A stretch of DNA of 64,000 nucleotides from assembly GCF_032444005.1 (NCBI RefSeq), contig NC_091284.1, forward strand, positions 624,464,001 to 624,528,000, given 5' to 3'. Below are positions 10,045 through 56,901 of the stretch, piece after piece. The stretch's first letter is position 1; every line of letters begins with the position of its first letter. Below the pieces are notes generated by a model that had not been told where the DNA came from, made no database searches, and saw nothing but the letters and a program-made list of their open reading frames with translations. Origin of the DNA: Ranitomeya imitator. Lineage: Eukaryota. Position numbers and translations under genes: made by a program.

Positions 10045-10053
10045 ACAAGGAGC
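10045..10053 (+). promoter_or_regulatory. Putative self-priming primer-binding site (non-tRNA PBS)
   Basis: ACAAGGAGC starts 2 nt after the LTR-terminal CA. There is no TGG (tRNA CCA complement). It has 9/9 complementarity to 9429-9437. Confidence 0.65.
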
Positions 10054-14982: not shown

Positions 14983-14988
14983 GTCCAC

Positions 14989-15545
14989 GTAGTATATTGC
15001 ACAGGCCATGTAGTATATTGCCCAGTGACGTAGTATATTGGCCAGTCACGTAGCATATTGGCCAGTCACGTAGTATATTGCCCAGCCACGTAGTATATTG
15101 CCCGATCACGTAGTATATTGCCCAGCCACATAGTATATTGCCCAGTGACGTAGTATATTGCCCAGCCACATAGTATATAGCAGAGCCACATAGTACGGTA
15201 TATTGGCCAGTCATGTAGTATATTGCCCAGCCACAAAGTATATAGCAGAGCCACGTAGAATATTGCCCAGTCACGTAGTATATTGCACAGCCCACGTAGT
15301 ATATTGCCCAGCGACATAGTATATTGCCCAGCCACGTAGTATATTGCCCAGTCACGTAGTATATTGCCCAGCCACGTAGTATATTGCACAGCGACGGAGC
15401 ATATTGTCCAGCCACGTAGTATATTGCCCAGTAACATAGTATATTGCCCAGCCACGTAGTATATTGCCCAGGCACGTAGTATATTGCCCAGCCACATAGT
15501 ATATTGCCCAGCGACGGAGTATACAGCACAGAGCCACGTAGTATA
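14989..15545. repeat. Helitron-borne minisatellite, 20-bp unit GTAGTATATTGCCCAGCCAC (~27 units)
   Basis: Tandem units are visible directly, with variants (CCAGTCAC, CCAGTGAC, AGAGCCAC) and no unique spacers. Confidence 0.95.
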
Positions 15546-22849: not shown

Positions 22850-24026
22850 TAGTGTTGAGCATTCCGATACCGCAAGTATCGGGTATCGGCCGATACTTGC
22901 GGTATCGGAATTCCGATACCGAGATCCGATACTTTTGTGGTATCGGGTATCGGTATCGGATACATAGAGATGTGTAAAATAAAGAATTAAAATAAAAAAT
23001 ATTGATATATTTACCTCTCCGGCGGCCCCTGGACTCAGCGCGGGTAACCGGCAGGCTTCGTTGTTCAAAATCAGCGCTTTTAGGACCTGAGAATCACGTC
23101 CCGGCTTCTGATTGGTCGCGGGCCGCCCATGTGACCGCCACGCGACCAATCACAAGCCGCGACGTCACCGCAAGCTATTAGCGCGCTCATTTTTGAAAAA
23201 TGAGCGCGTTAATGACTTTCAAAGACGTAGCGGCTTGTGATTGGTCGCGGCCACGCGACCAATCACAAGCCGCGACGTCACCGCAAGCTATTAACGCGCT
23301 CATTTTTAAAAATGAGCGCGTTAATGGCTTTCAAAGACGTAGCGGCTTTGATAGTCATTAACGCGCTCATTTTTAAAAATGAGCGCGTTAATAGCTTGCG
23401 GTGACGTCGCGGCTTGTGATTGGTCGCGGCCACGCGACCAATCACAAGCCGCTACGTCTTTGAAAGCCATTAACGCGCTCATTTTTAAAAATGAGCGCGT
23501 TAATAGCTTGCGGTGACGTCGCGGCTTGTGATTGGTCGCGTGGCCGCGACCAATCACAAGCCGCTACGTCTTTGAAAGTCATTAACGCGCTCATTTTTCA
23601 AAAATGAGCACGCTAATAGCTGGCGGTGACGTCGCGGCTTGTGATTGGTCGCGTGGCGGTCACATGGGCGGCCCGCGACCAATCAGAAGCCGGGACGTGA
23701 TTCTCAGGTCCTAAAAGCGCTGATTTTGAACAAAGAAGCCTGCCGGTTACCCGTGCTGAGTTCAGGGGCCGCCGGAGAGGTAAATATATCAATATTTTTT
23801 ATTTTAATTCTTTATTTTACACATCCCTATGGATCCCAGGGCCTGAAGGAGAGTTTCCTCTCCTTCAGACCCTGGGAACCATGAGAATACCTTCCGATAC
23901 TTGATGTCCCATTGACTTGTATTGGTATCGGATATCGGTATCGGCGATATCCGATATTTTTCGGGTATCGGCCGATACTATCCGATACCGATACTTTCAA
24001 GTATCGGACGGTATCGCTCAACACTA
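22850..24026. mobile_element. Non-autonomous hAT element, 1177 bp, with a large internal palindrome
   Basis: 8-bp TSD GTGTCCAC (22842-22849, 24027-24034). TIR TAGTGTTGAGC. Subterminal CCGATAC/GTATCGG repeats; inverted repeat ~22968-23823. Confidence 0.92.
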
Positions 24027-27362: not shown

Positions 27363-29565
27363 TTAGAGCTGTTAATCTTTGTGAGCATTGTGCTCCATAG
27401 CCTCTGTTTCAGGTAGGGCTTAGATGATAAGAGGATTTTTGTTCATGTGGAGGTTAGATAAGGGGAGTCAATTAGTGATACTGAGTGCCAGCTACAATTT
27501 GCTGTTGGAAGCATTGCAGCACAGGCATTCTCCATCTTGTTCTGAAATCAAGAAGAGTGTCCTTGGATGGAGTTTTCCCTGCTGAAGAAAGTAAGTTTAC
27601 TGGATGTAGCAGATGCGAGTTTTTAGATGCAGCATGTAGCAGAGCTCAAAAGCTAACACCACAGCTCTCTATGTACATTGTCTATTGACAGTGAGATGCT
27701 TATCAGAGGAAGGGGCGTGGTTAAACCACAGCTCACAGGAGCAGTAGTCAAGACAGCGATAATCTCCTAGTTATAAAACCTTTGTTATAAGTAAACAGCA
27801 CACAGCCAAAAAAGTGACATATTGTTGAATTCAGTGTCTTAGCTGCTACCTCATGCTATCCTCAAATTACCCTGCTAATAGTTTCACTTTCAGGACATTA
27901 TAATGCACAATGGACCTACTATGGACACATGTTTGATCTGGGCAAGTAAAAAGCAATATGCTGGTGGCAATGCAGGGGTTTGCTGATCACTTTATGATTG
28001 TAGAGGACATCTTGGACAACTACAACAATGTATTTCCTAGTCAAGAAAATGATCTATATCACTAATTGTTCCAGCCTGCCTGCATCAACTAAGTGTATTG
28101 ATTTACTCGATGACTTGCATGTAAGTTATACTGAGGACTAGCAAATGAGTTATTCTGTCTATTGTACCATGATACTTGCTCTGAATTGGTTCCTGTTGAT
28201 GGCTACCACCTGCTGTGAATTGTACTGATGTGCAACCACTAAGTTCCATATCACAATACTAAGTTTAGCCACTAATTTGAAAGCTGTAATAGTTGTCTTG
28301 TGCTGAGCAAACCTTGTTCCAATTAAATATTGGCGTGTCTGCATGAGTCACTACAATACCATCAAGTGGGGAGCCATATTACAATTCATAGGTCACATGC
28401 AAAAAAATGACCCACTGAATGTATTCTTGATCAAATCCTAAATTTTTATTCTGCATCAAACTATATTTTCTTCATAGAAAGAAAAGATTCTTTAAAATGT
28501 AAAATTATAACTGCTAAAATACAAGTTTTAAAACTTAAAAATGGATTTTTCAGTACTGTATATTATGTTCAAAGATGTGTATTTCACATTTTTCATACTC
28601 ACAAGAGCTTTTTTAATTTTGCTTGTTGCTAAGGATTGGGTAAAATATAGTTTAAAGATTTATGCAATGTGACCTTCGATCCAGAACACCAACAGACATT
28701 GAATGCTCTTTTTCTTATTAATGCATATCAAACTAATCCATTGTACGCAAACCAATGTTATGCATATTCATTACAGAAATCCCATTTCACATCAGAGTAA
28801 AGGATCAACAATTCAGTTTGTATTCAAAGTAGTGTGTGTTGGATAGAAGAAACAAAAACAATAATCCTTTACTTACACACTAGGATTAAAAGGTAAAATG
28901 TTAAACTGGATGCATGGCATAGTGAATGAAATTTACAAAGTTATTCACAAAAAAACTTTGAACAAATTAATTGAAACCAGTAACATTGTCATCTGTAGTT
29001 TGAAACAAACTGACAATCTTAACCTCTTAACGACCGCCAATATGCCTTTTAATGGCGGCAGTTAGATGTTACTAATGCCTCAGCTCTGCTTTTTAACGGT
29101 GCTGAGAAATATGTGTATAGCACCCCCCAGCATCAGAATTTCTCTGGGGTCTAGGCTACTGGAGGTAGCTCAGACCCCAGAGAACATGATTCGGATTGGT
29201 TTTTACCAACTCCAGTGTTGTGATCGCTGTTTTTAAGGGAATAATGGCGAGCGCAAAAAAATAAAAAATCTGATTTTCCATTTAATTTCTCTCTCCTCTG
29301 ATGGGATCACACATCAGAGGAAAGAGAAATTGGGTCCCCTGATCCCCCCTGGTAAGTCCAATGTTCCTGCATCCCCCAGTGAAGTCCCCATGCCAATGGT
29401 GTCTTCTTACAGGAGGAAAATGGCTGGAGCATGCGCAGTGCTCCCGCCAAGATCTGCCGGCCCACACCTGGCAATAATAGGAAATTTTTCTCATTGGTTC
29501 ATTTTGATCACTGTGATAGACTCTATCACAGTGATCAAAATAAAAAAATAGTAAATAAAACCCCC

Positions 29566-30528
29566 TGTTAGGACTGGCGGAACGCACCAAGAGAGATGAT
29601 ATAGATGCGTTCGCAGTCCGGGGTCCACCGTGCAGGTGAAACCTGCTGCTAGGAAATGACAGACTATATGGCGGTATCCAAAAGTATACACGCGTGGGTT
29701 AAACCTCACCCAGCGTGAAGAAAGCGATCCTGTTGCGTCACAGGACCGCGGTACCGCACATAGAGCGCGAGCAAGTGGTCAGCGAACTTAACCCCAACAG
29801 GGATTGTAGTCCGATTAGACCCTTGCTGGCACTACACCGCTACAGGGTGTGTAAGGAAATATATAATTATAGCACCGAAGTGCGAACTGTGCCGTGCTGG
29901 CAGGTACCACTAAGCACCCAGACGTGGGTCAGGAAGCGCACACTGGCGCGTGGCACCGCACTGGCGGTCACAGCAATAGACGCTGATACGTGTGTGACAC
30001 GTTGAGTGATTAGTCGGGCGCTAGATAGCAGCCATACACCATACGCGAACAGTCATACAATAGGGTAGGGGTATTTAATGAACGACTTGCACTCACAACA
30101 AACACACGTATTCAATTGTACACTAGCGCATGGCCGTGCGGTCATGCGCAGTTTATATAGTTGCAGGACAGGAAGTGGCCACAGAAACTTTGCCCTTCCA
30201 AGACCTGCCAAGAGGACCAATAGAATGCGCTGCAGAGTCTGAGCACATGACCCTCGATCTCCAACGGGAGATCTTGCCCTGGGCATGCTCAGTGTGCGCA
30301 GACAAGGACTTAGTCCCAGAGAAGTCCACTCGCTGCTGACCAGCACTGACTTTAATGGCAGTAGCTGAAGAAGCAGCAGTAACTCTCTGAACAGAGTGAG
30401 ACCGAGCAAGACGCTGGGATCGACGTCCCTGCTGAGCAGGCTCCACCGTGGCTGGATAGGAATGGGGGACCGCAGCGGAGACGGCTCGAGATTCCCCCTG
30501 TGCAGAAGCGGGAACTCGAGACCTAACA
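29566..30528 (-). repeat. 3' LTR of family 2 element (963 bp)
   Basis: TGTTAGG...CCTAACA, repeated at 34697-35584 with about 7 visible substitutions plus a 75-bp indel. Confidence 0.95.
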
Positions 30529-33500
30529 TTACCCCCCCTCCTAGGGCCCCCCCCTCCTTGGGCCTCGCTACGCTCGAAGGCAGCAATGAGCTGTGGGGCC
30601 CGAATGTTTTCAGCAGGCTCCCATGACCTGTTCTCTGGACCATAACCCTTCCAATCCACCAGATAGAACTTTTTGCCGTGTACCACCTTACACCCCAAAA
30701 TAGCGTTCACCTCGTAATCGTCCGTAGACGAACCCAATGTCCCGGCAGATGACTCGGAAAACCGGGACATGTATACGGGTTTCAAGAGGGACACATGAAA
30801 GGTGTCGGTGATACCCAAGCATGGAGGAAGAGCCAGGCGGTAGACCACAGGATTAACCTGTTCGAGAACCTTGAAGGGACCCAAGTAGCGAGGAGCAAAC
30901 TTAGTGGACTCAACTCGCAGCCTGATGTTACGGGCGAAGAGCCACACCAAGTCGCCAGGAGCAAAGGTCGGAGCGGGGCGCCGATGAACATCGGCGGAGA
31001 ACCTCATTCTCTCCTTGGAAGCCTGAATGGCATCCTGAGTGCGATCCCAAATGTCCCGTGCCTCCACAGCCCAGTCTGCCACCCTGGAATCGGCGGAAGA
31101 CACGGGCATAGGCGCAGGTACCCGCGGATGCTGACCATAGTTAAGGAGGAATGGAGTCTGTCCAGTGGAGTCAGCTACAGCATTGTTAAGAGCAAACTCC
31201 GCCCACGGTAGCAAAGATGCCCAGTCATCTTGCTTAGCAGAGACAAAATGTCGCAGGTATGTGACCAAGGTCTGGTTGGCTCTCTCCACCAACCCATTCG
31301 TCTCGGGATGATATGCCGAAGAGAGATTCAACTCGATACTGAGAAGGCGACAAAGCTCTCTCCAGAACCGAGATGCAAACTGGGGACCCCGGTCACTGAC
31401 AATTTTGTCTGGCATAGCGTGAAGACGGAAGATGTGTTTAACAAACAATGCTGCCAAGGCCCGTGCAGAAGGTAGCCGAGGAAGCGGCACCAAATGCACC
31501 ATTTTAGAAAAATGGTCGGTGATAACCCATATGACAGTACAGCCACGTGACTTGGGCAAACCCACCACAAAGTCCATCCCGACCATCTCCCAGGGCCTGT
31601 CTGCCACAGGCAGGGGGTATAACAACCCAGCTGGCCGTTGACGGAGAGACTTATTTTTGGCACAAGAGACACATGCCCGAACGTAGTCTCCTACGTCACG
31701 AACCATATGTGGCCACCAATACATTCTCGCCAACAACTCAGATGTCCTCTTTGCCCCAAAGTGTCCACCCACTCTGGACGAATGAACCCACGAGAGAACC
31801 TCCGGACGCAAATTGATGGGAACAAAAGTCTTGCCCGGAGGCACAGACTCAAGCGAAACCGGAGCTACGGTTCTCAGACTCTCTGGAGGGACAATGAGCC
31901 GAGGCTCGTCCTCCTCCTCCACAGTTGACACCAGGGAGCGAGAGAGAGCGTCAGCACGAATGTTCTTCTCCCCAGCGAGATAATGTAGAGTGAAGTGGAA
32001 CCGGGAGAAAAACAAGGACCATCTGGCCTGACGAGAATTCAGCCGCTGGGCTGTCTGTAAATAGACCAAATTCTTGTGGTCCGTGAAGACTTGGAATGGG
32101 AACTGAGCACCCTCCAAGAGATGTCTCCATTCCAAAAAGGCCAACTTCATTGCCAGCAGCTCCCTATCCCCGATGGAGTAATTTCTCTCCGCTGGTGAGA
32201 AGGTCTTTGAGAAGAAGAAGCATGGATGCTTCCGACCTTGAGCATCCTTTTGATAGAGGACTGCTCCTGCACCAACGGATGAGGCATCCACCTCCATTAG
32301 GAATGGCTTATCCACATCAGGATGATGTAAGATGGGAGCGCTAGCAAAGTGGGACTTAATAGAAGTGAAGGCCTTGGAGACCTCTTCGGACCACAATTTA
32401 GGATTCGCTCCCTTCTTGGTGAGGGATACCAAGGGAGCTACCAGGGTTGAGAAGTGGGGGATGAACTGACGATAGTAATTTATGAACCCCATAAAGCGCT
32501 GCACCGCTTTCAGAGAATGGGCTTCCTGCCAGTCCATCACTGCCTGTAGTTTGGCAGGATCCATAGCCAATCCCTGGGCCGAGATGATGTAGCCCAGGAA
32601 AGGTAAAGACTCCTGCTCAAACATACACTTCTCCAACTTGGCATAGAGGGAGTTTGCCCGTAGGAGGTCGAAGACTTTGCAAACATCTCTCCGGTGGGAG
32701 TCAATATCTGGAGAGTAGATGAGAATATCATCCAGATAGACTACGACCGAGGTGGAAAGCATATCCCGGAAGATATCGTTCACAAAGTCTTGGAAAATGG
32801 CTGGGGCATTACAGAGCCCGAAGGGCATCACCAGATATTCATAGTGCCCATCCCTGGTGTTAAAGGCCGTCTTCCATTCGTCCCCCTCACGGATGCGAAT
32901 CAGGTTGTAAGCACCCCGCAGATCTAATTTAGTAAATACCCTTGCTCCCCGAAGTCTATCGAATAACTCAGATATCAAGGGCAAAGGATACTTATTCTTA
33001 ACGGTGATGGCGTTAAGACCCCTGTAGTCTATGCATGGGCGCAATTCCCCATTCTTCTTCTGCACGAAAAAGAACCCTGCCCCAGCAGGTGACACTGACT
33101 TCCTAATGAATCCTCTTGCCAGATTTTCCTGGATGTACTGTGACATTGCCTCCGTCTCCGGGAGAGATAGCGGATAAACTCGACCCCGGGGAGGCTCAGC
33201 ACCAGGCAAGAGATCAATAGGACAGTCATAGGGGCGATGAGGCGGAAGGACCTCCGCCGCCTTTTTGGAGAACACGTCTGCATAAGACCAATACTGCTTG
33301 GGGAGAGAGGATAGATCTGCGGGTACCTCAGTAGTAGCAACCTGAACGCACTCCCTCTGACACCTACCCCCACAAGATTCACCCCAACCCAGAATTCTGC
33401 CTGAGGACCACACGATATGAGGAGAGTGGTACCGTAGCCAAGGTATTCCCAACAGGACCTCATCAATTCCTTCCGGAATGACGAGCAGAGAAATTATCTC

Positions 33501-34538
33501 CTGATGAGATGGCGACATGGACAGAGTAAAAGGGATGGTCTGGTGTGTTATCTGTGAGGGCAATGTCGACCCATTCACCACTCGCACCGTTACTGGTTGA
33601 GCAAGCATTACCAGGGGTATTGCGTGACGTTGGGCGAAGGCAGAAGACATAAAATTGCCCTCCGCCCCAGAATCCACGCAGAGCTCTACCGAGTGGGAGA
33701 ATGAGCCAATAGTAATTGTCCCCTTAAAGGACAACTTAGAGGCAAACGTCGCCGTGTCTAGTGTACCTCCACCTACTACCACTAGACGCTGACGTTTCCT
33801 CGACCGCTGAGGACATCTGGTGGCTAGATGTCCTGACTGCTGGCAAACATGACAGACCCTGAGTGCACAAGCGGTCCGGGACTTAGATCCTGCTTGTGAC
33901 ACTTCCCTGGCCTCATGTGGCTCAGGAACCAGGACCGGAGATTCCAGAGGTTTGGCGAAAGTAGGAGCCAGCCGAAACCTCTGCCTACACTGGGCTCGCT
34001 CTAACCTCCGCTCGTTAAAACGGAGGTCAATTCGAGTGGAGACAGTTATTAACTCCTCCAGTGTGGCAGGAATCTCCCTAGTGGCCAGAGCGTCCTTTAC
34101 GTGGTCAGCCAAGCCCCTCCAAAATATGGGGATAAGAGCTTTATCCGACCAATCCAGCTCAGATGCTAAGGTGCGGAATTGGACGGCAAAATGGCTGACC
34201 AAGGACTCACCCTGAGTTAATGCCAGCAATTGGAGCGCAGTATCATGGGTGACTTGAGGTCCTAAAAAGACCTGTTTCAGGGCGCTCAGAAACAGCGGAG
34301 CACTCTGCACCACATGATCGCCACGCTCCCACAGCGGCGTAGCCCATTCCAACGCCCTGTCCGACAATAGAGACAGAATAAATCCCACCTTAGCCCGCTC
34401 TGTGGGAAAACGTGCAGCCAGGAGCTCGAGGTGAATAGAGCACTGACTCACAAATCCCCTACAAAACTTGCTATCACCAGAAAATTTTTCTTTCAGCGGG
34501 AGGCGAGATAATGTCGGAACAGGGGTGGCAATGGACAT
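30153..34538 (-). CDS. Gag-Pol polyprotein of family 2 (CCHC, protease, RT, RNase H, integrase, chromodomain); probable N-terminal frameshift
   Basis: CHVCQQSGHLATRC; VDSGA; YLDD; TDHKNL; GGHFG..C..C; SDRGPQF; YEVNAILGCK...YLVDWKGY. The frame is open from 34619 with the first in-frame ATG at 34538. The ATG at 34668 is out of frame with it. The ORF runs 376 nt into the 3' LTR. Confidence 0.9.
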   Translation of the reverse strand: MSIATPVPTLSRLPLKEKFSGDSKFCRGFVSQCSIHLELLAARFPTERAKVGFILSLLSDRALEWATPLWERGDHVVQSAPLFLSALKQVFLGPQVTHDTALQLLALTQGESLVSHFAVQFRTLASELDWSDKALIPIFWRGLADHVKDALATREIPATLEELITVSTRIDLRFNERRLERAQCRQRFRLAPTFAKPLESPVLVPEPHEAREVSQAGSKSRTACALRVCHVCQQSGHLATRCPQRSRKRQRLVVVGGGTLDTATFASKLSFKGTITIGSFSHSVELCVDSGAEGNFMSSAFAQRHAIPLVMLAQPVTVRVVNGSTLPSQITHQTIPFTLSMSPSHQEIISLLVIPEGIDEVLLGIPWLRYHSPHIVWSSGRILGWGESCGGRCQRECVQVATTEVPADLSSLPKQYWSYADVFSKKAAEVLPPHRPYDCPIDLLPGAEPPRGRVYPLSLPETEAMSQYIQENLARGFIRKSVSPAGAGFFFVQKKNGELRPCIDYRGLNAITVKNKYPLPLISELFDRLRGARVFTKLDLRGAYNLIRIREGDEWKTAFNTRDGHYEYLVMPFGLCNAPAIFQDFVNDIFRDMLSTSVVVYLDDILIYSPDIDSHRRDVCKVFDLLRANSLYAKLEKCMFEQESLPFLGYIISAQGLAMDPAKLQAVMDWQEAHSLKAVQRFMGFINYYRQFIPHFSTLVAPLVSLTKKGANPKLWSEEVSKAFTSIKSHFASAPILHHPDVDKPFLMEVDASSVGAGAVLYQKDAQGRKHPCFFFSKTFSPAERNYSIGDRELLAMKLAFLEWRHLLEGAQFPFQVFTDHKNLVYLQTAQRLNSRQARWSLFFSRFHFTLHYLAGEKNIRADALSRSLVSTVEEEDEPRLIVPPESLRTVAPVSLESVPPGKTFVPINLRPEVLSWVHSSRVGGHFGAKRTSELLARMYWWPHMVRDVGDYVRACVSCAKNKSLRQRPAGLLYPLPVADRPWEMVGMDFVVGLPKSRGCTVIWVITDHFSKMVHLVPLPRLPSARALAALFVKHIFRLHAMPDKIVSDRGPQFASRFWRELCRLLSIELNLSSAYHPETNGLVERANQTLVTYLRHFVSAKQDDWASLLPWAEFALNNAVADSTGQTPFLLNYGQHPRVPAPMPVSSADSRVADWAVEARDIWDRTQDAIQASKERMRFSADVHRRPAPTFAPGDLVWLFARNIRLRVESTKFAPRYLGPFKVLEQVNPVVYRLALPPCLGITDTFHVSLLKPVYMSRFSESSAGTLGSSTDDYEVNAILGCKVVHGKKFYLVDWKGYGPENRSWEPAENIRAPQLIAAFERSEAQGGGGPRRGGNVRSRVPASAQGESRAVSAAVPHSYPATVEPAQQGRRSQRLARSHSVQRVTAASSATAIKVSAGQQRVDFSGTKSLSAHTEHAQGKISRWRSRVMCSDSAAHSIGPLGRSWKGKVSVATSCPATI
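30531..30553 (-). promoter_or_regulatory. Polypurine tract of family 2 element
   Basis: The minus strand reads GGGGGGCCCTAGGAGGGGGGG-TAA-TGTTAGG. Confidence 0.8.
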
Positions 34539-34684
34539 AGTAGCTGCAGCCACGCTGGCAGCCTGTACAGCTACTGCAGTAACATCCACAGCTGAAGTCG
34601 CGCTCTCGAGAGCCGCCAACCTACCCTCCAGCTGCTGGATATACCGCAGATTGCTGTTTGTCTGTCATCACTAGCCAGACCCTG

Positions 34685-34695
34685 GCGCTAGAGTA
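34685..34695 (-). promoter_or_regulatory. Putative self-priming PBS of family 2
   Basis: Minus strand TACTCTAGCGC, 1 nt after the LTR-terminal CA, with no TGG. It has 10/11 complementarity to GCGCTAGTGTA (35185-35175). Confidence 0.65.
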
Positions 34696-34696
34696 A

Positions 34697-35584
34697 TGTT
34701 ACTGTTAGGAAATGACAGACTATATGGCGGTATCCAAAAGTATACACGCGTGGGTTAAACCTCACCCAGCATGAAGAAAGCGATCCTGTTGCGTCACAGG
34801 ACCGCGGTACCGCACATAGAGCGCGAGCAAGTGGTCAGCGAACTTAACCCCAACAGGGATTGTAGTCCGATTAGACCCTTGCTGGCACTACACCGCTACA
34901 GGGTGTGTAAGGAAATATATAATTATAGCACCGAAGTGCGAACTGTGCCGTGCTGGCAGGTACCACTAAGCACCCAGACGTGGGTCAGGAAGCGCACACT
35001 GGCGCGTGGCACCGCACTGGCGGTCACAGCAATAGACGCTGATACGTGTGTGACACGTTGAGTGATTAGTCGGGCGCTAGATAGCAGCCATACACCATAC
35101 GCGAACAGTCATACAATAGGGTAGGGGTATTTAATGAACGACTTGCACTCACAACAAACACACGTATTCAATTGTACACTAGCGCATGGCCGTGCGGTCA
35201 TGCGCAGTTTATATAGTTGCAGGACAGGAAGTGGCCACAGAAACTTTGCCCTTCCAAGACCTGCCAAGAGGACCAATAGAATGCGCTGCAGAGTCTGAGC
35301 ACATGACCCTCGATCTCCAACGGGAGATCTTGCCCTGGGCATGCTCAGTGTGCGCAGACAAGGACTTAGTCCCAGAGAAGTCCACTCGCTGCTGACCAGC
35401 ACTGACTTTAATGGCAGGAGCTGAAGAAGCAGCAGTAACTCTCTGAACAGAGTGAGACCGAGCAAGACGCTGGGATCGACGTCCCTGCTGAGCAGGCTGC
35501 ACTGCGGCTGGATAGGAATGGGGGATCGCAGCGGAGACGGCTCGAGATTCCCCCTGTGCAGAAGCGGGAACTCGAGACCTAACA
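34697..35584 (-). repeat. 5' LTR of family 2 element (888 bp; 75-bp deletion in U5)
   Basis: Matches 29566-30528 except that the equivalent of 29571-29645 is absent. Confidence 0.93.
35175..35215 (-). promoter_or_regulatory. LTR TATA box (TATATAAA 35215-35208) and predicted transcript 5' end / self-primer GCGCTAGTGTA (35185-35175)
   Basis: The TATA-to-primer spacing is 30 nt, the same as in family 1 and in the LTR at 55997 (TATAAAA 56393, GCACTAGTATA 56423). Confidence 0.7.
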
Positions 35585-36587
35585 CCCCCCTTTATCACCC
35601 CCTTAGTTAGGTAAAAATAATAAAATAAAAAAAAATTATTTATTTTCATTTTTCCATTAGGGTAGAGTTGGGCTAAAGTTCAGGTTGGGCTAAAGATATG
35701 GTTAGGGTTGGGCCTAGTGTTAGGGTTCTAAAAAAAGACAGAAAGAATGGACTAAAACAGGCTCGCACAACCCCAAAATGTAGAAAAAATGAACACGTTT
35801 ATTGAATCACCACAACATGATCTAAAAACACTTAAAAACTCACAACAAGTGTGTACAAAACACCCCCATAACACAATAAAGTATCTATACAAAGAAGAGC
35901 AGATCTGCATGCACATCTACTGGTCTTAGGGTTTTGAGATGATTTAAGTATGGAGACAAGATGATACCACCTGTCAGAGGAGGTGTTTGAAGCTGGGTTA
36001 TGACACTGTCTTGGGAGTGATTTATAGGAGAATACTGAATGAGGGTATTGTAGGAACCCTTGGATCTTTGTATACTGCTTTGCGGTGATTTATTTTTGTG
36101 GAAAAGCTTTGGTTACCATTATGCCTGTAATGGGGGCTTTGGTTGCCACTATTTTGAGGGGGACGTGAGCTCAAGGTGGCTCATGACCCTCTCTCAAGGC
36201 TGGATGTGGCTTGCGACCCTTTCTCAGAGCTGACTGTGGCTCTCAAGGCCAGAAACGTTGGGGACCTCTGCCTTATAATGTCCTAACAAAGAATAAATTA
36301 TGTTTCCAAAATTGTGCTGATGTAAAGTTGATATGTGGGAAATGTTATTTATTAGCTATTTTGTGTGACACCGCTATCTGATTTAAGGGTACAAAAATAA
36401 AAAGTATGAAAATTGCATAATTTTCTAAATGTTAGCCACATTTCTGTTTATTTTCATAAATAAATGCAAGTTATATCGAAGAAATTTTACCACCAACATG
36501 AAGTGCAATATGTCAAAAAAAGAAAATCTCAGAATCAGTGGGATCCATTGAAGCATTCTAGAGCTATGACTTCATAAAGTGACAGTG

Positions 36588-37266
36588 TAATTCACCAAAA
36601 ATGCCCCAGAATCAATATATCCCTACACTTGGGAAATAAAGACCACCAATAAATACATATAAATCACATCTTTGAAGATTAGAATAAAGGTAATCCCAAA
36701 CAAGGTGGTACTTTTGTAATAAAACAGATTTTATTTGTAACAATTAAAATTACTTATAACAAAAAGGTGCTCGAACCAAAAAAGAGGGACATAACAGCCA
36801 TAAAGAGACATTCCCTATATTGCTAAAGCACAACCAAACAAAGTGACTTTCCATGTGCCCTATATACGTTACCAGGCTAAGATGTTACTGAGGGGAACAA
36901 AAAGGTGGATTTGCCTAATACTAATATCCATCATAGAAGTGGCACAGCAATGCCTAATTTCTAACACCCTGTGGTGCGAATATCCCCCCACTACTAATGC
37001 CAAGCCACTAATAAAGGTAATTATGGTAAATACAAGTATTACCTATAGTGCGCTGTGTGGAGTCTCCTCGGCGTCCCTCTGCCTCGACGCGCGTTTCGCC
37101 TGATGCTTCTTCGGGAGGCCTCTTTATAGCAGTTATGTCCCTCTTTTTTGGTTCGAGCACCTTTTTGTTATGAGTAATTTTAATTGTTACAAATAAAATC
37201 TGTTTTATTACAAAAGTACCACCTTGTTTGGGATTACCTTTATTCTAATCTCCAAAGATGTGATTT
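36588..37266 (-). mobile_element. Penelope-like element fragment with inverted terminal segment
   Basis: 14-bp TSD ATAAAGTGACAGTG (36574-36587, 37267-37280). 36661-36808 is the inverted copy of ~37120-37266 (4 differences seen). Contains a hammerhead motif. No RT/EN coding sequence. Confidence 0.65.
37081..37119 (-). ncRNA. Minimal type I hammerhead ribozyme motif (Penelope-associated)
   Basis: The minus strand reads GCCUC-CCGAAGA-AGCAUCAGGC-GAAAC-GCGC-GUC-GAGGC. This gives stem I GCCUC/GAGGC, a CUGANGA-like core (U4C variant), a tiny stem II, GAAA, a palindromic stem III ACGCGCGU and a GUC cleavage triplet. Confidence 0.7.
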
Positions 37267-37864
37267 ATAAAGTGACAGTGGTCAGAATTGTAAAAATTGG
37301 TTTGGTCATTAAGTACCAAAATGGCTCTGTCACTAAGGGGTTAAAGTGGTTTTAACACAATGTATGCAATGTTACCTAAACACAGAGTAGTTAATAAATG
37401 TTGTATTGATTTAGCCTTTATAGTAGAAACCCCCACAATCATTATAGCAAATACCTCAAACTTCTGTTTTCTTATTACTGCACAACTTTGATAGTCAAGC
37501 ATGCACGTTAGCCCTGACAAAAACAGTTGAGTACATTGTTTCAACAAAGTTTGACATCACAATGTCATCAAATTTGACCATAGCTCCTAATTACTGGGCT
37601 CAGTGGTTATGCCAACACAACACAAGATGCTGAACCCAATGATTGACTGCAGCATTGAAAGGTGGTGTCCATGTTATGCTTCTGAAGAAGCTTATCAGCA
37701 AAACTGGATAAGCAATGCATATGAAAAGCTAATGTCTGGTAGGATAAGTAAAATCTCTATTTTTTGTACAGAAAGGAGCAGTTTGTATTCAAGTTCAGTA
37801 ATAAAAAAATTGGCCTATAATGTTTTGATGACCTGATTTTCATTCTTAATAAAATTGTGATGTA

Positions 37865-38879: not shown

Positions 38880-40800
38880 TTTCTCAGTAAAATTATACCA
38901 TACATTTTTTGTGCAATTTCTCCTGAGTACGCCAATACCCCATATACTGTCTGGGAGAATGGCAGGGCTCAGAAGGGAAGGAGCACTGTTATGAATAGGT
39001 AATTCAGAACCACAATGGACCTTGAAGTTCAGAGCACACAAAGTGACCTGACAATAAGCAAAAAACATAGGACGAGCTCTGAGACGTGGGAACTCTGCTG
39101 ACCGCAATCCCTAATCCTATCACACCACACTAGAGGTAGCCGTGGATTGCGCCTAACGTTCCCTATGCAACTCGGCACAGCCTGAGAAACTAGCTAGGCC
39201 TGAAGATAGAAAAATAAGCCTACCTTGCCTCAGAGAAATTCCCCAAAGGAAAAGGCAGCCCCCCACATATAATGACTGTGAGTTAAGATGAAAATACAAA
39301 CACAGAGATGAAATAGATTTAGCAAAGCGAGGCCCGACTTACTGAATAGACCGAGGATAGGAAAGATAGCTTTGCGGTCAACACAAAAACCTACAAACAA
39401 CCACGCAGAGGGGCAAAAAGACCCTCCGCACCGACTAACGGTACGGAGGTGCTCCCTCTGCGCCTCAGAGCTTCCAGCAAGCAAGAAAAACAAAGAAAAG
39501 CAAGCTGGACAGAAAATATAGCAACAAAAGTAACACAAGCAGAACTTAGCTTATGCTGAGCAGACAGGCCACAGGAACGATGCAGGAGGAAGCAAAACCA
39601 ATACTAGAACATAGACTGGAGGCCAGGATCAAAGCACTAGGCGGAGTTAAATAGAGCAGCACCGAACGACTTAACCTTATCACCTGAGGAAGGAAACTCA
39701 GAAGCCGCAGTACCACTTGTGACCACAAGAGGGAGCTTGATCACAGAATTCACAACAGAGCACCATTTGACTTTTGGAATTCAAAAATTGTCTGGAATCG
39801 ATAGCCGACACCATGTTGCTTTGGAGAGCCCCTGAAGTGTTTAAACAAAGGAAAAACCCCACACGTGACACCATTTTGGAAACTAGACCATTCAAGGTAT
39901 TTATCTAGATGTGTTATGAGCACCTCGAACCCACAGGAGTTTCACAGAATTTTATAAAGTTGAGCCGAGAAAATTGAAAGACAATTTTTTCCCACAAAAA
40001 TGCTATTTTAGTCTTAATTTTTTTGTTTCCACGAGGGTAAAAAGAAAATTAACACCACTGTCAATTGTGAAATTTTTCCTGAGCATGCCAAGACCAATAT
40101 ATGGTCAGAATCTACCCTTCAGCTACAGTGCAAAGCTCAGAAGGAAATGAGCACCATATTGGAGAGCAGATTTTGCTGGAATAGTTTGTGGGTGACTAGT
40201 CACATTGTCAGACTCCTAGAGATGCCAGAACAGCAGACCCCCCCCCCCATAAGTGACCTAATTTTACAATTTCCTCCCCTGAACGAATTATTCTAGTGGT
40301 ACAGCAAACATACCAACACCACAGCTGTTCCATACAATTTTATACCGTTTAATGGAGAAGAATAAATAATTATATTTTTACCACTAAAATGTCGTTTTAA
40401 CACCAGATTTTACATTTTTACATAGGAAAATAGGTAGATAGGTAAATGGTTTCTACACACATAGATGAATTCCCAGAGCAGTGTCATTTCCCAAATGGGG
40501 TCACTTCACTGGGATTCTGCTGTTCTGGCATTTTTCAGAGATGCTAAGTGCCAGAATAGCAGAATCCTCCCTGAATTGATCAAATTTTGTACATGACAAC
40601 CCCCTTAGAATTCATCTATGGGTGTAGTTACCATTTTCACTCCATGGATGATATACAGAAACAATCACACAGTGGAAGTTTTAGAGCAAAAATTGCAAAT
40701 ATGCCATTATAATGCTCAATATATTGTGCCCAATTTGGGTCTCCAGAAAAATCCTATTCCCTCAGGAAATTGTTAAGCGAGCTCTACTCCAATGTGCCAT
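38880..40800. repeat. Internal segments of a large piggyBac-type non-autonomous repeat (host of the solo LTR)
   Basis: Repeated GGGCTCAGAAGGGAAGGAGCACCAT / AGCTCAGAAGGAAATGAGCACCAT modules. Termini are not identified. Confidence 0.45.
38987..39757 (-). mobile_element. Solo LTR, diverged family 1 subfamily (771 bp)
   Basis: The minus strand begins TGTTGTGAATTCTGTG (as at 9295) and ends CATAACA. It shares GCTAACAGTCATTATATGTGGGGG-like and AGTTGCATAGG blocks with the family 1 LTR. GAGCAC is duplicated at 38981-38986 and 39758-39763. Confidence 0.92.
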
Positions 40801-51364: not shown

Positions 51365-53042
51365 CTAAACTGACTCTATGGGCATTCAGTCTTTTCCTGA
51401 GTCATCTCCTGCTTCTAAATCTCAGAGAGTATGCTAGAAATTAAAATATGCTATGTGCACATACCCTTAGAGAGCATTGACATGCCCCCTGTATACTAAA
51501 AAAATTTGCATGTGACTTCAAAACTTAATTGCTATGGTCTGGAACAATGGCTGACTGCAAAGCAGGTATTGTTTTTAATTGTTATCTTAGGAGCCAAGCA
51601 GTAAAATACATCTGAACATCTAGAATAAAGCAGTTTTCAAAGGGAAAAACACATATCTATTTCTTTTGTAATAGTGTTAACTCTTTTGTTATAATCAAAG
51701 AGCTGGGAAAATTTTTGGATGGAGTAAATCATGTGAGGGTAGATGTCAGAGGTAGTGCGTTCAGGTTACTTCTACAGAGGTACCCGCAGATCTTTCCTCT
51801 CTCCCCAAGCACTATTGATCCTATGCGGACGTGTTCTCCAAAAGGGCTGCGGAGACACTTCCTCCTCACTGCCCCTATGACTGTCCTATTGATCTGTTGC
51901 CTGGTGCTGAGCCTCCCCAGGGTCGAGTCTATCCGTTATCTCTCCCGGATATGGAGGCAATGTCCCAGTACATTCAAGAGAATCTGGCAAGAGGATTCAT
52001 TAGGAAGTCAGTGTCACCTGCAGGGGCTGGCTTCTTCTTCGTGCAGAAGAAAAATGGAGAACTACGTCCATGCATAGACTACAGGGGTCTTAACGCCATC
52101 ACCGTTAAGAATAAATACCCACTACCTCTGATATCTGAGCTTTTCGATAGGCTATGGGGAGCAAGGGTATTTACTAAATTAGATCTGAGGGGTGCTTACA
52201 ACCTGATTCGCATCCGTGAGGGGGACGAATGGAAGACGGCTTTTAACACCAGGGATGTTCACTATGAATATCTGGTGATGCCCTTCCGGCTCTGTAATGC
52301 CCCAGCCATTGTTCAAGACTTTGTGAACGACATCTTCCGGGAGATGCTCACCACCTCGTTCGTAGTCTATGTGGATGATATTCTCATCTACTCTCCAGAT
52401 ATTGACACCTCATTGGAGAGATGTTGGCAAAATTTTTGGCCTCTTACGGGCAAACTCCCTCTATGCCAAGTTGGAGAAGTGTGTGTTTGAGCAGGAGTCC
52501 TTGCCTTTCCTTGGCTATATCATCTCTGCCCAGGGATTGGCTATGGATCCTGCCAAACTACAGGCTGTGATGGACTGGCAAGAACCCCATTCTCTTAAAG
52601 CGGTGCAGTGCTTTATGGGGTTAATTCATTACTATCACCAGTTCATTCCACACTTCTCAACTTTGGTAGCTCCCTTGGTTGCCCTCATCAGGAAGGGAGC
52701 CAGTCCCAAGTTGTGGTCGGAGGAGGTCTCCAAGGCCTTTCTCTTGATCAAGTCACACTTCGCTAGCACTCCCATCCTACATTGCCCCGATGTAGATAAG
52801 CCATTTATTATGGAGGTGGATGCCTCATCCGTTGGTGCTGTAGCAGTCCTCTTCCAAAAGGATGCTCAAGGTTAGAAGTTTCCTTGTTTCTCCTCCAAGA
52901 CCTTTTCACCAGCGGAGAGGAATTATTCAATCAGGAAAAGGGAGTTGCTAGCCATGAAGTTGGCTTTCTCAGAGTGGAGACACCACTTGAAGGGAGCTCG
53001 CATTCCCTTCCAAGTGTTCACAGACCACAAGAACTTGGTGTA

Positions 53043-54549
53043 CAGTCATGGCCAAAAGTTTTGAGTGTTTGTCTGATGTTTATATCACATGCAGAAATAT
53101 AATTGCAATCATATTATGAGTACCAATAGGTTATATTGACAGTTAGAATGAGTTAATGCAGCAAGTCAATATTTGCAGTGTTGACCCTTCTTCTTCAAGA
53201 CCTCTGCAATTCTCCCTGGCATGCTCTCAATCAACTTCTGGACCAAATCCTGACTGATAGCAGTCCATTCTTGCATAATCAATGCTTGCATTTTGCCAGA
53301 ATTTGTTGGTTTTTGTTTGTCCACCCGTCTCTTGATGATTGACCACAAGTTCTCAATGGGATTAAGATCTGGGGAGTTTCCAGGCCATGGACCCAAAATC
53401 TCTATGTTTTGTTCCATGAGCCATTTAGTTATCACCTTTGCTTTATGGCAAGGTGCTCCATCATGCTGGAAAAGGCATTGTTGGGCGCCAAACTGCTCTT
53501 GGACGGTTGGGAGAAGTTGCTCTTGGAGGACATTCTGGTACCATTCTTTATTCATGGCTGTGTTTCTAGGCAAGACTGTGAGTGAGCTGATTCCCTTGGC
53601 TGAGAAGCAACCCCACACATGAATGGTTTCAGGATGCTTTACAGTTGGCATGAGACAAGACTGGTGGTATTGCTCCCCTCTTCTCCGAATAAGCTGTTTT
53701 CCAGATGTCCCAAACAATCGAAAAGGGGATTCATCAGAGAAAATGACTTTGCCCCAGTCCTCAGCAGTCCACTCCCTGTACCTTTTGCAGAATATCAGTA
53801 GGTCCCTGATGTTTTTTCTGGAGAGAAGTGGCTTCTTTGCTGCCCTCCTTGAAACCAGGCCTTGCTCAAAGAGTCTCCGCCTCACAGTGTGTGCAGAAGC
53901 ACTCACACCAGCCTGCTGCCATTCCTGAGCAAGCTCAGCACTGCTGGTTGCCCGATCCCACAGTTGAAACAGTTTTAAGATACGGTCCTGGCGCTTGCTG
54001 GTCTTTCTTGGGCGCCCTGGAGCATTTTTGACAACAATGGAAGCTCTCTCTTTGAAGTTCTTGATGATGCGATAGATTGTTGACTGAGGTGCAATCTTTG
54101 TAGCTGCGATACTCTTCCCTGTTAGGCCATTTTTGTGCAGTGTAATGATGGCTGCACGTGTTTCTTTAGCGATAACCATGGTTAACTGAAGAGAAACAAT
54201 GATACCAAGCACCAGCCTCCTTTTAAAGTGTCCAGTGATGTCATTCTTACTTAATCATGACTGATCGCCAGCCCTGTCCTCATCAACACCCACACCTGTG
54301 TTAATGGATCAATCACTAAAACGATGTTAGCTGCTCCTTTTAAGGCAGGACTGCAATGATGTTGAAATGTGTTTTGGGGGTTAAAGTTCATTTTCTGGGC
54401 AAATATTGACTTTGCAAGTACAGTAATTGCTGTTAAGCTGATCACTCTGACATTCAGGAGTATATGCAAATTGCCATTAGAAAAAATGAAGCAGTAGACT
54501 TTGGAAAAATTAATATTTGTCTTATTCTCAAAATTTTTGTCCATGACTG
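53043..54549 (-). mobile_element. Tc1/mariner DD35E (Traveler-like) transposon, full length, 1507 bp
   Basis: TA TSD (53041-53042, 54550-54551) restores host pol KNLVY|LQMAQRLNS. 23-bp TIR CAGTCATGGCCAAAAGTTTTGAG with 2 mismatches between ends. Confidence 0.93.
53166..54179 (-). CDS. DD35E transposase, 337 aa, uninterrupted ORF
   Basis: ATG at 54179. Paired-like HTH region, GRPRK, VIFSDES (D1), FQHDGAPCH (D2), [12 protein letters not shown] (E), with exactly 35 residues between D2 and E. Confidence 0.92.
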   Translation of the reverse strand: MVIAKETRAAIITLHKNGLTGKSIAATKIAPQSTIYRIIKNFKERASIVVKNAPGRPRKTSKRQDRILKLFQLWDRATSSAELAQEWQQAGVSASAHTVRRRLFEQGLVSRRAAKKPLLSRKNIRDLLIFCKRYREWTAEDWGKVIFSDESPFRLFGTSGKQLIRRRGEQYHQSCLMPTVKHPETIHVWGCFSAKGISSLTVLPRNTAMNKEWYQNVLQEQLLPTVQEQFGAQQCLFQHDGAPCHKAKVITKWLMEQNIEILGPWPGNSPDLNPIENLWSIIKRRVDKQKPTNSGKMQALIMQEWTAISQDLVQKLIESMPGRIAEVLKKKGQHCKY

Positions 54550-55996
54550 TACTTACAGATGGCCCAGCGGCTGAATTCTCGCCAGACTAGATGGTCCCTG
54601 TTCTTCTCCCGGTTCCATTTTACTCTCCATTTTCTCTCCGGGGAGAAGAACATTCATGCCAACACTCTCTCTCTCGCTGTGTAGTGTCATCTGAGGAGGA
54701 GGAAGAGCCTTGGCTTATTGTCCCTTCTGAGAGCCTGAGAACTGTAGCTCCGGTTTCGCTAGAGTCTGTTCCCCCAGGCAAGACTTTTGTTCCATCTAAT
54801 TTATGACTGGAGGTTCTCTCTTGGGCTCACTCATCCAGGGTGGGTGGATATTTTGGGACCAAGAGGACATCTGAGCTTTTGGCGAGGACGTACTGGTGGC
54901 CGCATATGGCCTGTGACGTCAGGAACTCTATTCGGGCGTGTGTTCTGTGCCAAGAATCGGTCTCCTCGGCATCGGCCTGCTGGGCAACTTTACCCCCTGC
55001 CGGTGGCAGACAGGCCCTGGGAGATGGTTGGGATGGACGTTGTGGTGGGCTTACCTAAGTCTCGTAACTGCACCGTTATCTGGGTTGTCACCGATCATTT
55101 CTCTAAGATGGTGCACTTGGTGCCGCTTCCACGGTTACCTTCTGCATGGGCCTTGGCGGCGTTGTTCATTAAACATTTACCGTTTTCATGGCATACCTGA
55201 TAAAATAGCCAGTGACCGGGGTCCCTGGTTTGCGTCTCGGTTTTGGAGAGATCTCTGTCGTTTACTCAGCATAGAACTAAATCTCTCCTCTGCATATCAT
55301 CCCAAGACGAATGGGTTGGTAGAGAGAGCAAACCACACTCTGGTGACACATTTGCAACATTTTGTCTCTGCTAGGCAGGATGATTGGGCATCTTTGCTAC
55401 CTTGGGCAGAATTTGCTCTTAACAATGCCGTAGCCGATTCCACTGGGCAGACTCCTTTTCTCATTATTTACGGCCAGCATCTGTGTGTCCCTGTGCCCAT
55501 GCCTGTCATCCACTGATTCCAGGGTGGCAGACTGGGCAGTGGAGGCACGTGATATCTGGGACCACACACAGGATGCCATCCGGGCCTCCAAGGAGAGAAT
55601 GAGGGTTTCGGCTGATACACACCGGCGCCCCGCTCCAACCTTTGCTCCTGGCGACTTAGTGTGGCTCTCCGCCCGTAACATCAGGCTGCGAGTTGAGTCC
55701 ACTAAGTTTGCGCCTCACTACATTGGCCCATTCAAGGTTCTGGAACAGGTCAACCCTGTGGTCTACCGTTTGGCTATTCCTCTGCCGGGACATCGGGTTC
55801 GTCCACGGATGAGTACGAGGTGAATGCTATCGTGGGGTGCAAGGTAGTACGTGGCAAAATATACTATCTGGTGGACTGGAAGGGCCACGGCCCTGAGGAC
55901 AGAACCTGGGAACCTGTAGAGCACATTCTGGCTCCGCTGCTCATTGCAGCCTTTGATCATAGCAAGGCCCGGGGGGGCCCTAGGAGGGGGGGGTAA

Positions 55997-56901
55997 TGTT
56001 AGGAGTCGAGTTCCCGCTGCTGCACAGGGGGAATCTCAAACCATGTCTGCTGCGGTCTCTCATTCTGCATCAGCCGCAGTGGAGCCTGCTCAGCGGAGAC
56101 GTCGGTCCCAGCATCTTGCTCAATCTCACTCTGTGCAAAGGGTTACTGCTACTTTTCCTGCTTCTGCCACTGAAGCCAGTGCTGGGCAGCGGCGAGCAGA
56201 CGCTTTTGGGACTAAGTCCTGATTTTCCCCTTCTGAGCATGCACAGGGCAAGATCTCCCATTGGAGATCGAGGGGCACATGCTCAGATACTGCAGCAGAT
56301 CCCATTGGTCCTCCAGGAAGGTCCTGAAGGTGCTCAACTTCTGTGGCAGCCTCCCATTGGTCTTTCTGGGAAGGCCCTGTACATGCTGCAGCTATAAAAG
56401 GTTTGCATGGCCGCGCGGCCATGCACTAGTATACAATTTTAATTGTGTGTGTGTTGATGAGTGCAAGTCATTCCTTAATAAAACCATCCCTTGGGTATGA
56501 CTGTTCGCATAAGGTGTATGGCTGCTATCTAGCACCCGGCTGAACTCACAGCGTTAACACATGAAACAGTGTCTACTGCTGTGACCGCCAGTATGGTGCC
56601 ACATGCCATTAGAGTGCTTCTTTAGCCCAAGGCTGGGTGGTTAGTGGCGTCCGCCAGTACTGCACAGCTCGCACTCTCGTGCTATTTAATTATTTGCTTT
56701 GTGCAGTACTGTGGCCCTGTGATGCAACAGGGTTCGCTTCTTTCACACAGGGTGAAGCTAACCCGTGTGAATCCTCATTGTGCCGCCATATAGTCCATCA
56801 TTGCTTAGCAGCAGGTACCATCTCTGCACGGTGGACCCCGGGCTGTGAACGCACCTTATTCCTTTTCTCTAATTATTTGGTGCGTTCCGCTAGCCCTAAC
56901 A
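55997..56901 (+). repeat. 3' LTR of decayed family 2 copy (905 bp)
   Basis: TGTTAGGAGTCGAG...GCCCTAACA, homologous to the reverse complement of 29566-30528. TATAAAA at 56393. Confidence 0.92.

What the first reader, a model, noticed from the sequence alone, without database searches (positions are those of the whole stretch)
34685..35215. Independent second family shows the same self-priming geometry
Seen: the family 2 LTR is not visibly similar to family 1, yet on the minus strand TATATAAA (35215) is followed exactly 30 nt later by GCGCTAGTGTA (35185-35175). This pairs 10/11 with TACTCTAGCGC just inside the 5' LTR (34695-34685). The diverged LTR at 55997 keeps the same 30-nt spacing (TATAAAA 56393, GCACTAGTATA 56423). 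The same architecture with a different primer sequence in two families argues strongly against chance.
Basis: partly seen in the sequence, partly recalled or inferred. Interest (0 to 1): 0.78.

Follow-up and report, generated by a model that had tools for sequence, protein, structure and literature searches.

The report
Self-priming frog gypsy retrotransposon (Tf1/sushi type)
A frog gypsy-type retrotransposon carries, instead of a tRNA primer site, a short site that pairs with the predicted first 11 bases of its own RNA; this is the self-priming trick already known from fission-yeast Tf1 and its vertebrate "sushi" relatives, so it confirms a known mechanism and does not reveal a new one.

Summary
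On the minus strand, TATATAAA (35215-35208) is followed 30 nt later by GCGCTAGTGTA (35185-35175). This pairs 10/11 with TACTCTAGCGC (34695-34685) next to the 5' LTR, and it is the best such match in the whole LTR.

The element is a chromovirus with a gag-PR-RT-RH-IN-chromodomain polyprotein. Its closest relatives are copies in the poison frog Ranitomeya imitator.

Those copies have the same geometry, with 10/11 to 11/11 pairing. Two duplex positions changed on both sides relative to the window copy. A third frog family, an Ascaphus element and a Takifugu sushi-like element show the same layout with unrelated primer sequences.

Families 1 and 2 sit in one vertebrate chromovirus clade, so they are not independent inventions. 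Self-priming is already published for the Tf1/sushi group, vertebrates included. This scan reached the same verdict elsewhere in this genome (s1-288117).

New detail:
- The true family 2 LTR is 963 nt, and the 5-bp GGGGG target duplication confirms its ends.
- The window's 5' LTR lost 75-81 nt of U5, including a conserved hairpin.
- The apparent 7-nt gap before the primer site is probably 1 nt.
- The native gag start codon is out of frame.

Verdict: new member of a known kind, low interest.

The parts
34697..35584 (-). Family 2 5' LTR (TGTTAGG...TAACA). It is 888 nt on the preferred reading; the alternative end is 34703. It carries a 75-81 nt internal deletion near the U5 end relative to its own 3' LTR.
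   Evidence: LTR pair at offset 5056. The deletion shows up against the 3' LTR and the R. imitator copies.
35208..35215 (-). TATA box (TATATAAA), part of a TATA-to-primer block that is conserved across copies
35175..35185 (-). Predicted transcription start and 11-nt self-primer, GCGCTAGTGTA (start of R)
   Evidence: It lies 30 nt after the TATA box and is the best complement to the post-LTR sequence in the whole LTR. The start site itself is inferred, not mapped.
34685..34695 (-). Primer-binding site TACTCTAGCGC. It pairs 10/11 with the self-primer, with a mismatch at duplex position 8.
   Evidence: minimum-free-energy fold
34674..34686 (-). Small hairpin GCCAG-GGT-CTGGC immediately 3' of, and overlapping, the end of the primer-binding site. 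It is conserved in the R. imitator copies.
   Evidence: Folds; alignment
30153..34619 (-). Uninterrupted 1488-codon gag-PR-RT-RNaseH-IN-SH3-chromodomain reading frame. The native ATG (34668-34666) is out of frame because of a 2-nt deletion at about 34649/34648.
30532..30542 (-). Polypurine tract (AGGAGGGGGGG), 3 nt upstream of the 3' LTR
29566..30528 (-). Family 2 3' LTR, full length (963 nt). It has its own TATA box (30159-30152), a primer copy (30129-30119) and the U5 terminal hairpin (about 29571-29625).
35585..35589 (-). Target-site duplication GGGGG, 5' copy
29561..29565 (-). Target-site duplication GGGGG, 3' copy
51710..56901 (+). Diverged, 5'-truncated family-2-like copy with no 5' LTR and no primer-binding site. 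An unrelated 1.5-kb insertion interrupts it at 53043-54549. Its 3' LTR is 55997-56901, with TATAAAA at 56393 and GCACTAGTATA at 56423.

Best explanation
The stretch is the 5' LTR and leader of a frog chromovirus. This is a Ty3/gypsy element of the vertebrate Tf1/sushi ('Amn-san-like') lineage. It starts reverse transcription with its own RNA instead of a tRNA.

Proposed steps:
1. Transcription starts about 30 nt after the LTR's TATA box.
2. The first ~11 nt of the RNA fold back over the 360-670 nt R-U5 region and pair with the primer-binding site 1 nt past the LTR.
3. By analogy with Tf1, the element's RNase H cuts the RNA after about nt 11.
4. The freed 3' end is extended to make minus-strand strong-stop DNA.

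Shown here: the complementarity, its fixed position, co-variation of the two sides, and the phylogenetic placement. Inferred: the start site, the cleavage and the priming.

The particular copy in the window is probably no longer a competent template. Its 5' LTR has lost the U5 hairpin next to the primer site, the site has a mismatch, and the native gag start codon is out of frame.
For: - Pfam gives gag, PR, RT, RNase H, IN, SH3_Tf2-1 and a chromodomain in one frame. The best solved relative is the Ty3 polyprotein.
- The geometry (28-30 nt after a TATA-like box where one is recognised, none in L005; CA + 0-2 nt) holds in all eight elements: window family 2 (10/11), window family 1 (9 contiguous pairs), R. 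imitator L001 (11/11), L002 (10/11), L003 (11/11 with the 3' LTR primer, one G:U with the 5' LTR primer), a third R. imitator family in L005 (10/11), Ascaphus L007 (11/11; 0 of 1000 shuffles reach this) and Takifugu L006 (10/11).
- Primer sequences are unrelated between families, yet the pairing is kept.
- Within family 2, duplex positions 9 and 11 changed on both sides.
- Minimum-free-energy folds of the predicted R-U5-primer-site RNA close the domain by pairing the 5' end with the primer site, in the window copy (z = -4.5) and in L003 (z = -5.5).
- The block from the TATA box to the primer is a conserved island in an otherwise indel-rich LTR alignment.
- The tree puts both window families in one starred vertebrate clade with Takifugu elements.
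- The literature states that self-priming is used by the Tf1/sushi group from yeast to vertebrates (PMC6317226, PMC4600332). Amn-san chromoviruses are the most abundant LTR elements in frogs (PMC4131045).
Against: - There is no experimental start-site or cDNA data for these elements. The start site is inferred only from the TATA spacing.
- Complementarity alone is not rare: 5-10% of shuffled LTRs reach 10/11 somewhere.
- The window copy has a central mismatch.
- No frog tRNA set was available, so priming by an internal tRNA fragment is not formally excluded.
- No labelled Tf1 or sushi-ichi reference sequence was in the tree.
Confidence: 0.85

Rival explanations
1. The 5'-end/leader complementarity is a long-range RNA structure with another role, such as genome circularisation, packaging or translation control. 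Reverse transcription would then be primed in trans by a tRNA or tRNA fragment.
For: Long-range 5' structures are common in retroelement leaders. The folds show only that the pairing is favourable, not what it does. No frog tRNA collection could be searched, and none of the sequences held contains a tRNA gene.
Against: No TGG-initiated tRNA-type site lies within 20 nt of the LTR end. The sequence right after the LTR differs completely between families and tracks each family's own predicted 5' end; a site for a fixed host tRNA would not do this. The layout is the one shown experimentally to prime Tf1, as cited in PMC4600332.
Confidence: 0.08
2. It is a chance match between an LTR 11-mer and the leader.
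For: In 51 of 1000 dinucleotide shuffles of the window's LTR, a 10/11 match appeared somewhere against offsets 0-10.
Against: The match sits exactly 30 nt after the TATA box and next to the LTR end. The same placement recurs in five lineages with different sequences, with 11/11 in three elements and compensatory changes.
Confidence: 0.02
3. Family 2 evolved self-priming independently of family 1 (convergence).
For: The LTRs of the two families share no detectable nucleotide similarity, and their primer sequences are unrelated.
Against: The polyproteins are 43% identical end to end. Both families fall in one well-supported vertebrate clade, and every member examined has the same layout, the Takifugu element included. 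Inheritance from a self-priming ancestor is the simpler account.
Confidence: 0.05

Closest known systems
Tf1 / Tf2 / Tj1 of fission yeasts (self-primed Ty3/gypsy chromoviruses; Levin 1995, 1996; Lin & Levin 1997, 1998; PMC4600332)
   Same: - A gag-pol polyprotein in one frame, with PR-RT-RH-IN and a chromodomain.
- A primer-binding site next to the 5' LTR that pairs with about the first 11 nt of the transcript.
- A stem-loop in U5 just upstream of the primer site (here seen in the 3' LTR and in relatives).
   Different: The host is a vertebrate. The R-U5 loop closed by the pairing is long (about 360-670 nt). The LTR and primer sequences are unrelated to Tf1's. Nothing has been tested experimentally here.
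Vertebrate Tf1/sushi group: sushi-ichi of Fugu, and the Amn-ichi/-ni/-san lineage of fish, amphibians and reptiles (Butler et al. 2001, as cited in PMC6317226; PMC4131045)
   Same: - Same clade in the tree, together with Takifugu elements.
- The LTR termini fit the published Sushi integrase-recognition motifs TGTYANR...CNTNACA (PMC3601003).
- The gag matches the RTL1-8/LDOC family, found in genes derived from sushi-like elements.
- The same self-priming layout is seen directly in a Takifugu copy.
   Different: These are dendrobatid-frog subfamilies with their own primer/primer-site sequences. The window copy is degraded at its 5' end.
tRNA-primed Ty3/gypsy elements such as Ty3
   Same: Overall polyprotein architecture. 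The best solved homologue is the Ty3 Gag-Pol.
   Different: No site complementary to a tRNA 3' end (beginning TGG) lies next to the LTR. The site co-varies with the element's own 5' end.

Membership tests
Tf1/sushi-group self-priming chromoviruses (Metaviridae) | Ty3/gypsy domain order PR-RT-RNaseH-IN | tested here: met
   Pfam hits along the 1488-aa frame are in this order. The Ty3 polyprotein is the best solved match.
Tf1/sushi-group self-priming chromoviruses (Metaviridae) | Chromodomain at the integrase C-terminus | tested here: met
   PF00385 at residues 1302-1350, after SH3_Tf2-1
Tf1/sushi-group self-priming chromoviruses (Metaviridae) | Primer-binding site complementary to about the first 11 nt of the element's own transcript | tested here: met
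   10/11 in the window copy; 10-11/11 in three R. imitator copies. The complement lies exactly 30 nt after the TATA box. The 5' end of the transcript is predicted, not mapped.
Tf1/sushi-group self-priming chromoviruses (Metaviridae) | Primer-binding site directly next to the 5' LTR (0-2 nt) | tested here: met
   1 nt in L001, L002, L003, L005 and L007. 1 nt in the window copy if the LTR ends at 34697; 7 nt if it ends at 34703.
Tf1/sushi-group self-priming chromoviruses (Metaviridae) | Primer and primer-binding site co-vary between copies and families | tested here: met
   Duplex positions 9 and 11 changed on both sides within family 2. The sequences are wholly different but still paired in five lineages.
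Tf1/sushi-group self-priming chromoviruses (Metaviridae) | Phylogenetic placement with sushi-like and Tf1-like elements | tested here: inconclusive
   Both window families lie in a starred vertebrate clade with Takifugu elements, with a fungal (Ustilago) chromovirus next outside. No labelled Tf1 or sushi-ichi reference sequence was available.
Tf1/sushi-group self-priming chromoviruses (Metaviridae) | U5 stem-loop next to the primer site (the U5-IR analogue required in Tf1) | tested here: inconclusive
   A stem of about 16 bp with compensatory pairs is present in the window's 3' LTR and in the R. imitator copies. It is deleted from the window's 5' LTR. Equivalence to the Tf1 structure was not tested.
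Tf1/sushi-group self-priming chromoviruses (Metaviridae) | RNase H cleavage after nt ~11 and extension of the freed 5' fragment | not testable with these tools
   Needs cDNA or biochemical data.
tRNA-primed LTR retrotransposons | Site complementary to a tRNA 3' end (TGG...) within a few nt of the 5' LTR | tested here: not met
   No TGG occurs in the first 20 nt after the LTR in any family 2 copy. The site varies together with the element's own 5' end. Complementarity to an internal tRNA fragment could not be tested: there are no tRNA genes in the sequences held.

The most novel reading that the evidence does not exclude
The vertebrate branch may use a structurally distinct version of self-priming. 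In it, a 360-670 nt R-U5 domain is closed by the 5'-end/primer-site duplex and flanked by a conserved U5 terminal hairpin and a small post-site hairpin. The family-specific primer/site pair would then act as an address that keeps co-resident families from priming on each other's RNA. Copies like this one, with an open polyprotein frame but crippled cis elements, might survive as protein donors.
Probability: 0.12. Interest if true: 0.4.

Novelty: new member of a known kind. Interest (0 to 1): 0.2.

Why it matters
This finding adds dendrobatid-frog chromovirus subfamilies to the list of elements that carry the Tf1/sushi self-priming signature. It also supplies clean natural co-variation between the self-primer and its binding site, which had mostly been argued from single consensus sequences.

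In practice, annotation pipelines that look only for tRNA-type sites will mislabel these abundant frog elements as lacking a primer-binding site. The LTR boundaries here also needed the target duplication and sister copies to be set correctly. The finding does not change what is known about how reverse transcription is primed.

Tried and rejected
- **Compensation in the diverged in-window copy:** impossible. That copy is 5'-truncated at about 51710 and has no primer-binding site.
- **Family-1-like LTR at about 38986-39757 (minus):** a solo or 3' LTR with a different putative primer (GCCTCCAGT) but no adjacent primer site, so it is uninformative.
- **tRNA alternative:** ARAGORN found no tRNA genes in the window or in four loci, so no host tRNA could be compared. 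Rfam gave no match anywhere in the window.
- **Significance from complementarity alone:** rejected as too weak (p about 0.05-0.1 per element). The argument rests on position and co-variation.
- **The 7-nt gap between LTR and primer site:** first taken at face value, then rejected in favour of a 1-nt gap once the full-length LTR end and the sister copies were seen.
- **Pseudophryne locus L004:** no usable LTR/primer-site junction, because the tandem array runs off the locus.
- **Primary Tf1 papers** (PMC230564, PMC109269, PMC1369541, PMC1563812): not held. They are cited only through papers that were read.
not built, on purpose.

Full report
**What is at the coordinates.** The window is eukaryotic repeat-rich DNA. 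A pair of direct repeats 5056 bp apart (29646-30528 and 34702-35584, about 99% identical) flanks a 1488-codon open frame on the minus strand. Pfam finds Retrotrans_gag/Ty3_capsid/RTL1-8, aspartic protease, RVT_1, RT_RNaseH, Integrase_H2C2, rve, SH3_Tf2-1 and a chromodomain, in that order. The best solved relative is the Ty3 Gag-Pol polyprotein.

Its closest proteins are from the poison frog Ranitomeya imitator (80-92% identity). Ascaphus follows at 53%, and many fish, Takifugu included, at about 45%.

**Checking the observation.**
- TATATAAA at 35215-35208
- GCGCTAGTGTA at 35185-35175, 30 nt after the first T of the TATA box
- TACTCTAGCGC at 34695-34685

Ten of the 11 positions pair; position 8 is a U:U mismatch. 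The diverged LTR has TATAAAA at 56393 and GCACTAGTATA at 56423, again 30 nt apart.

Complementarity alone is not impressive. In 51 of 1000 dinucleotide-preserving shuffles of the LTR, a 10/11 match appears somewhere. What makes it significant is where it sits, and that the same placement recurs in other elements (below).

**Correcting the anatomy.** I aligned the LTR ends with natural copies fetched from R. imitator (L001, L002, L003). The family 2 LTR continues about 80 nt beyond the point where the window's two LTRs stop matching.
- The window's 3' LTR really ends at 29566 (...GTCCTAACA). It is followed by GGGGG, which matches the GGGGG just upstream of the 5' LTR. That gives a 5-bp target-site duplication and fixes the boundaries.
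- The 3' LTR is therefore 963 nt, and the 5' LTR has lost 75-81 nt near its U5 end.
- The simplest alignment places the 5' LTR end at 34697 (...TAACA). That leaves one nucleotide before the primer-binding site, as in the R. imitator copies (CA-G-site) and the Ascaphus element (CA-T-site).
- The deleted segment holds a conserved U5 terminal hairpin of about 16 bp, which shows compensatory pair changes among copies.
- The window copy also has a 2-nt deletion shortly after the start codon used by the R. imitator copies, so the native ATG (34668-34666) is out of frame with the long ORF.

The copy has an open polyprotein frame but is damaged at three places near its 5' end.

**Does the pairing behave like a functional duplex?** Within family 2:
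- L001 and L003: primer GCGCTAGTATT, site AATACTAGCGC, 11/11. In L003 the 5' LTR primer has one G:U.
- L002: primer GCGCTAGTATC, site TATACTAGCGC, 10/11.
- Relative to the window copy, duplex position 9 is G-C in the window and A-T in R. imitator. Position 11 is A-T against T-A. Both are changes on both strands that keep the pair.

The block from the TATA box to the primer is a conserved island in an LTR alignment that is otherwise full of substitutions and indels.

RNA folding of the predicted R-U5-primer-site transcript closes the whole domain by pairing the 5' end with the site. This holds for the window copy (516 nt, z = -4.5) and for L003 (459 nt, z = -5.5).

**Beyond family 2.** The same search on other elements gave the same layout with unrelated sequences:
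- Window family 1: TATTTAG at 9399, GCTCCTTGT at 9429-9437, ACAAGGAGC at 10045-10053, 2 nt after the LTR.
- A third R. imitator family (L005, encoding P0005): GCCTTTGCTT paired with AAGCAAAGGC.
- An Ascaphus truei element (L007): GGTTGAGCATA paired with TATGCTCAACC, 11/11, with 0 of 1000 shuffles as good.
- A Takifugu flavidus sushi-like element (L006): GCTTGATCTA paired with TAGATCAAGC.

In each case the complement is the best in the LTR. It lies 28-30 nt after a TATA-like box (no such box was recognised in L005) and pairs with sequence 0-2 nt after the LTR's terminal CA.

**How independent are the families?** The two window polyproteins are 43% identical over their length. A maximum-likelihood tree of the RT-IN region puts family 1, family 2, the Ascaphus and Leptobrachium elements and all the fish elements in one supported vertebrate clade. 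A fungal chromovirus lies next outside. The shared geometry is best explained by descent from a self-priming ancestor, with primer and site co-evolving in each lineage. That is still good evidence against chance, but it is not convergence.

**Mechanism.** The proposed steps are:
1. Transcription starts about 30 nt after the TATA box.
2. The first ~11 nt of the RNA fold back onto the site just past U5.
3. The element's RNase H cuts after about nt 11.
4. The freed 3' OH primes minus-strand strong-stop synthesis through U5 and R.

The pairing, its position and its co-variation are shown here. The start site, the cleavage and the priming are inferred from Tf1. I could only reach that work through secondary sources: PMC4600332 and PMC6317226, citing Levin 1995/1996, Lin & Levin 1997/1998, Butler et al. 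2001 and Atwood-Moore et al. 2006. The primary papers were not held.

If the U5 hairpin is needed, as its Tf1 counterpart is reported to be, then RNA made from this copy's own 5' LTR would be a poor template.

**Rivals.** A trans-acting tRNA primer is unlikely. No TGG-initiated site lies near the LTR, and the site tracks each family's own 5' end. I could not compare against frog tRNAs, because the sequences held contain no tRNA genes, and Rfam found nothing in the window. Chance is excluded by the recurrence described above.

**Comparison with what is known, and novelty.** PMC6317226 states that self-primers were previously described in the Tf1/sushi group from yeast and vertebrates. PMC4600332 says the mechanism has been implicated from fungi to vertebrates. 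PMC4131045 reports that Amn-san chromoviruses are the most abundant LTR elements in frogs. The LTR termini fit the published Sushi motifs TGTYANR...CNTNACA (PMC3601003).

This scan had already reached the same verdict on other DNA of this genome (s1-288117).

The finding is a sound confirmation: a new member of a known kind, of low surprise. Its useful by-products are the corrected LTR boundaries, the natural compensatory changes, and the recognition that this 'intact' copy is degraded at its 5' end.

Both are listed under referred steps.

Noticed in passing
window 34697-34710 vs 29566-29655: The 5' LTR of the family 2 copy lacks 75-81 nt of U5, including a conserved ~16-bp terminal hairpin, that its own 3' LTR retains. 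LTRs are identical at integration, so this is a deletion that happened after insertion.
   Followed up: yes
window 34640-34670 (minus strand): There is a 2-nt deletion relative to three R. imitator copies just after the native gag ATG (34668-34666). It puts that start codon out of frame with the 1488-codon ORF. The next in-frame ATG is about 44 codons further on.
   Followed up: yes
window 35182-35207 (minus strand): A perfect 7-nt inverted repeat, GCGCATG...CATGCGC, brackets the predicted start site between the TATA box and the primer. It is conserved in all family 2 copies. Its function is unknown.
   Followed up: no
window 53043-54549: A 1.5-kb insertion unrelated to family 2 interrupts the diverged family-2-like copy between positions that are adjacent in the intact element.
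   Followed up: no
window ~38986-39757 (minus strand): A solo or 3' LTR about 85% identical to the family 1 LTR. It has the same TATTTA box, but its putative primer is different (GCCTCCAGT against GCTCCTTGT). No primer-binding site is attached.
   Followed up: partly
L001 4600-5880 (R. imitator): The 5' LTR of this family 2 copy is scrambled: two segments (about 5027-5383 and 5474-5763) are in inverted orientation, giving two opposed TATA-primer blocks. It recalls the fold-back product noted elsewhere in this genome (s1-274983).
   Followed up: no
L007 6567-17607 (Ascaphus); L004 45520-57365 (Pseudophryne): Tandem LTR-internal-LTR-internal-LTR arrays of chromoviruses that share the middle LTR.
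   Followed up: no
window 14926-15601: A tandem array with a 20-bp period, immediately downstream of the family 1 3' LTR.
   Followed up: no
window 22958-23836, 6865-7234, 60363-60758, 36658-37269: Several near-perfect inverted-repeat (MITE-like or foldback) structures are scattered through the window.
   Followed up: no
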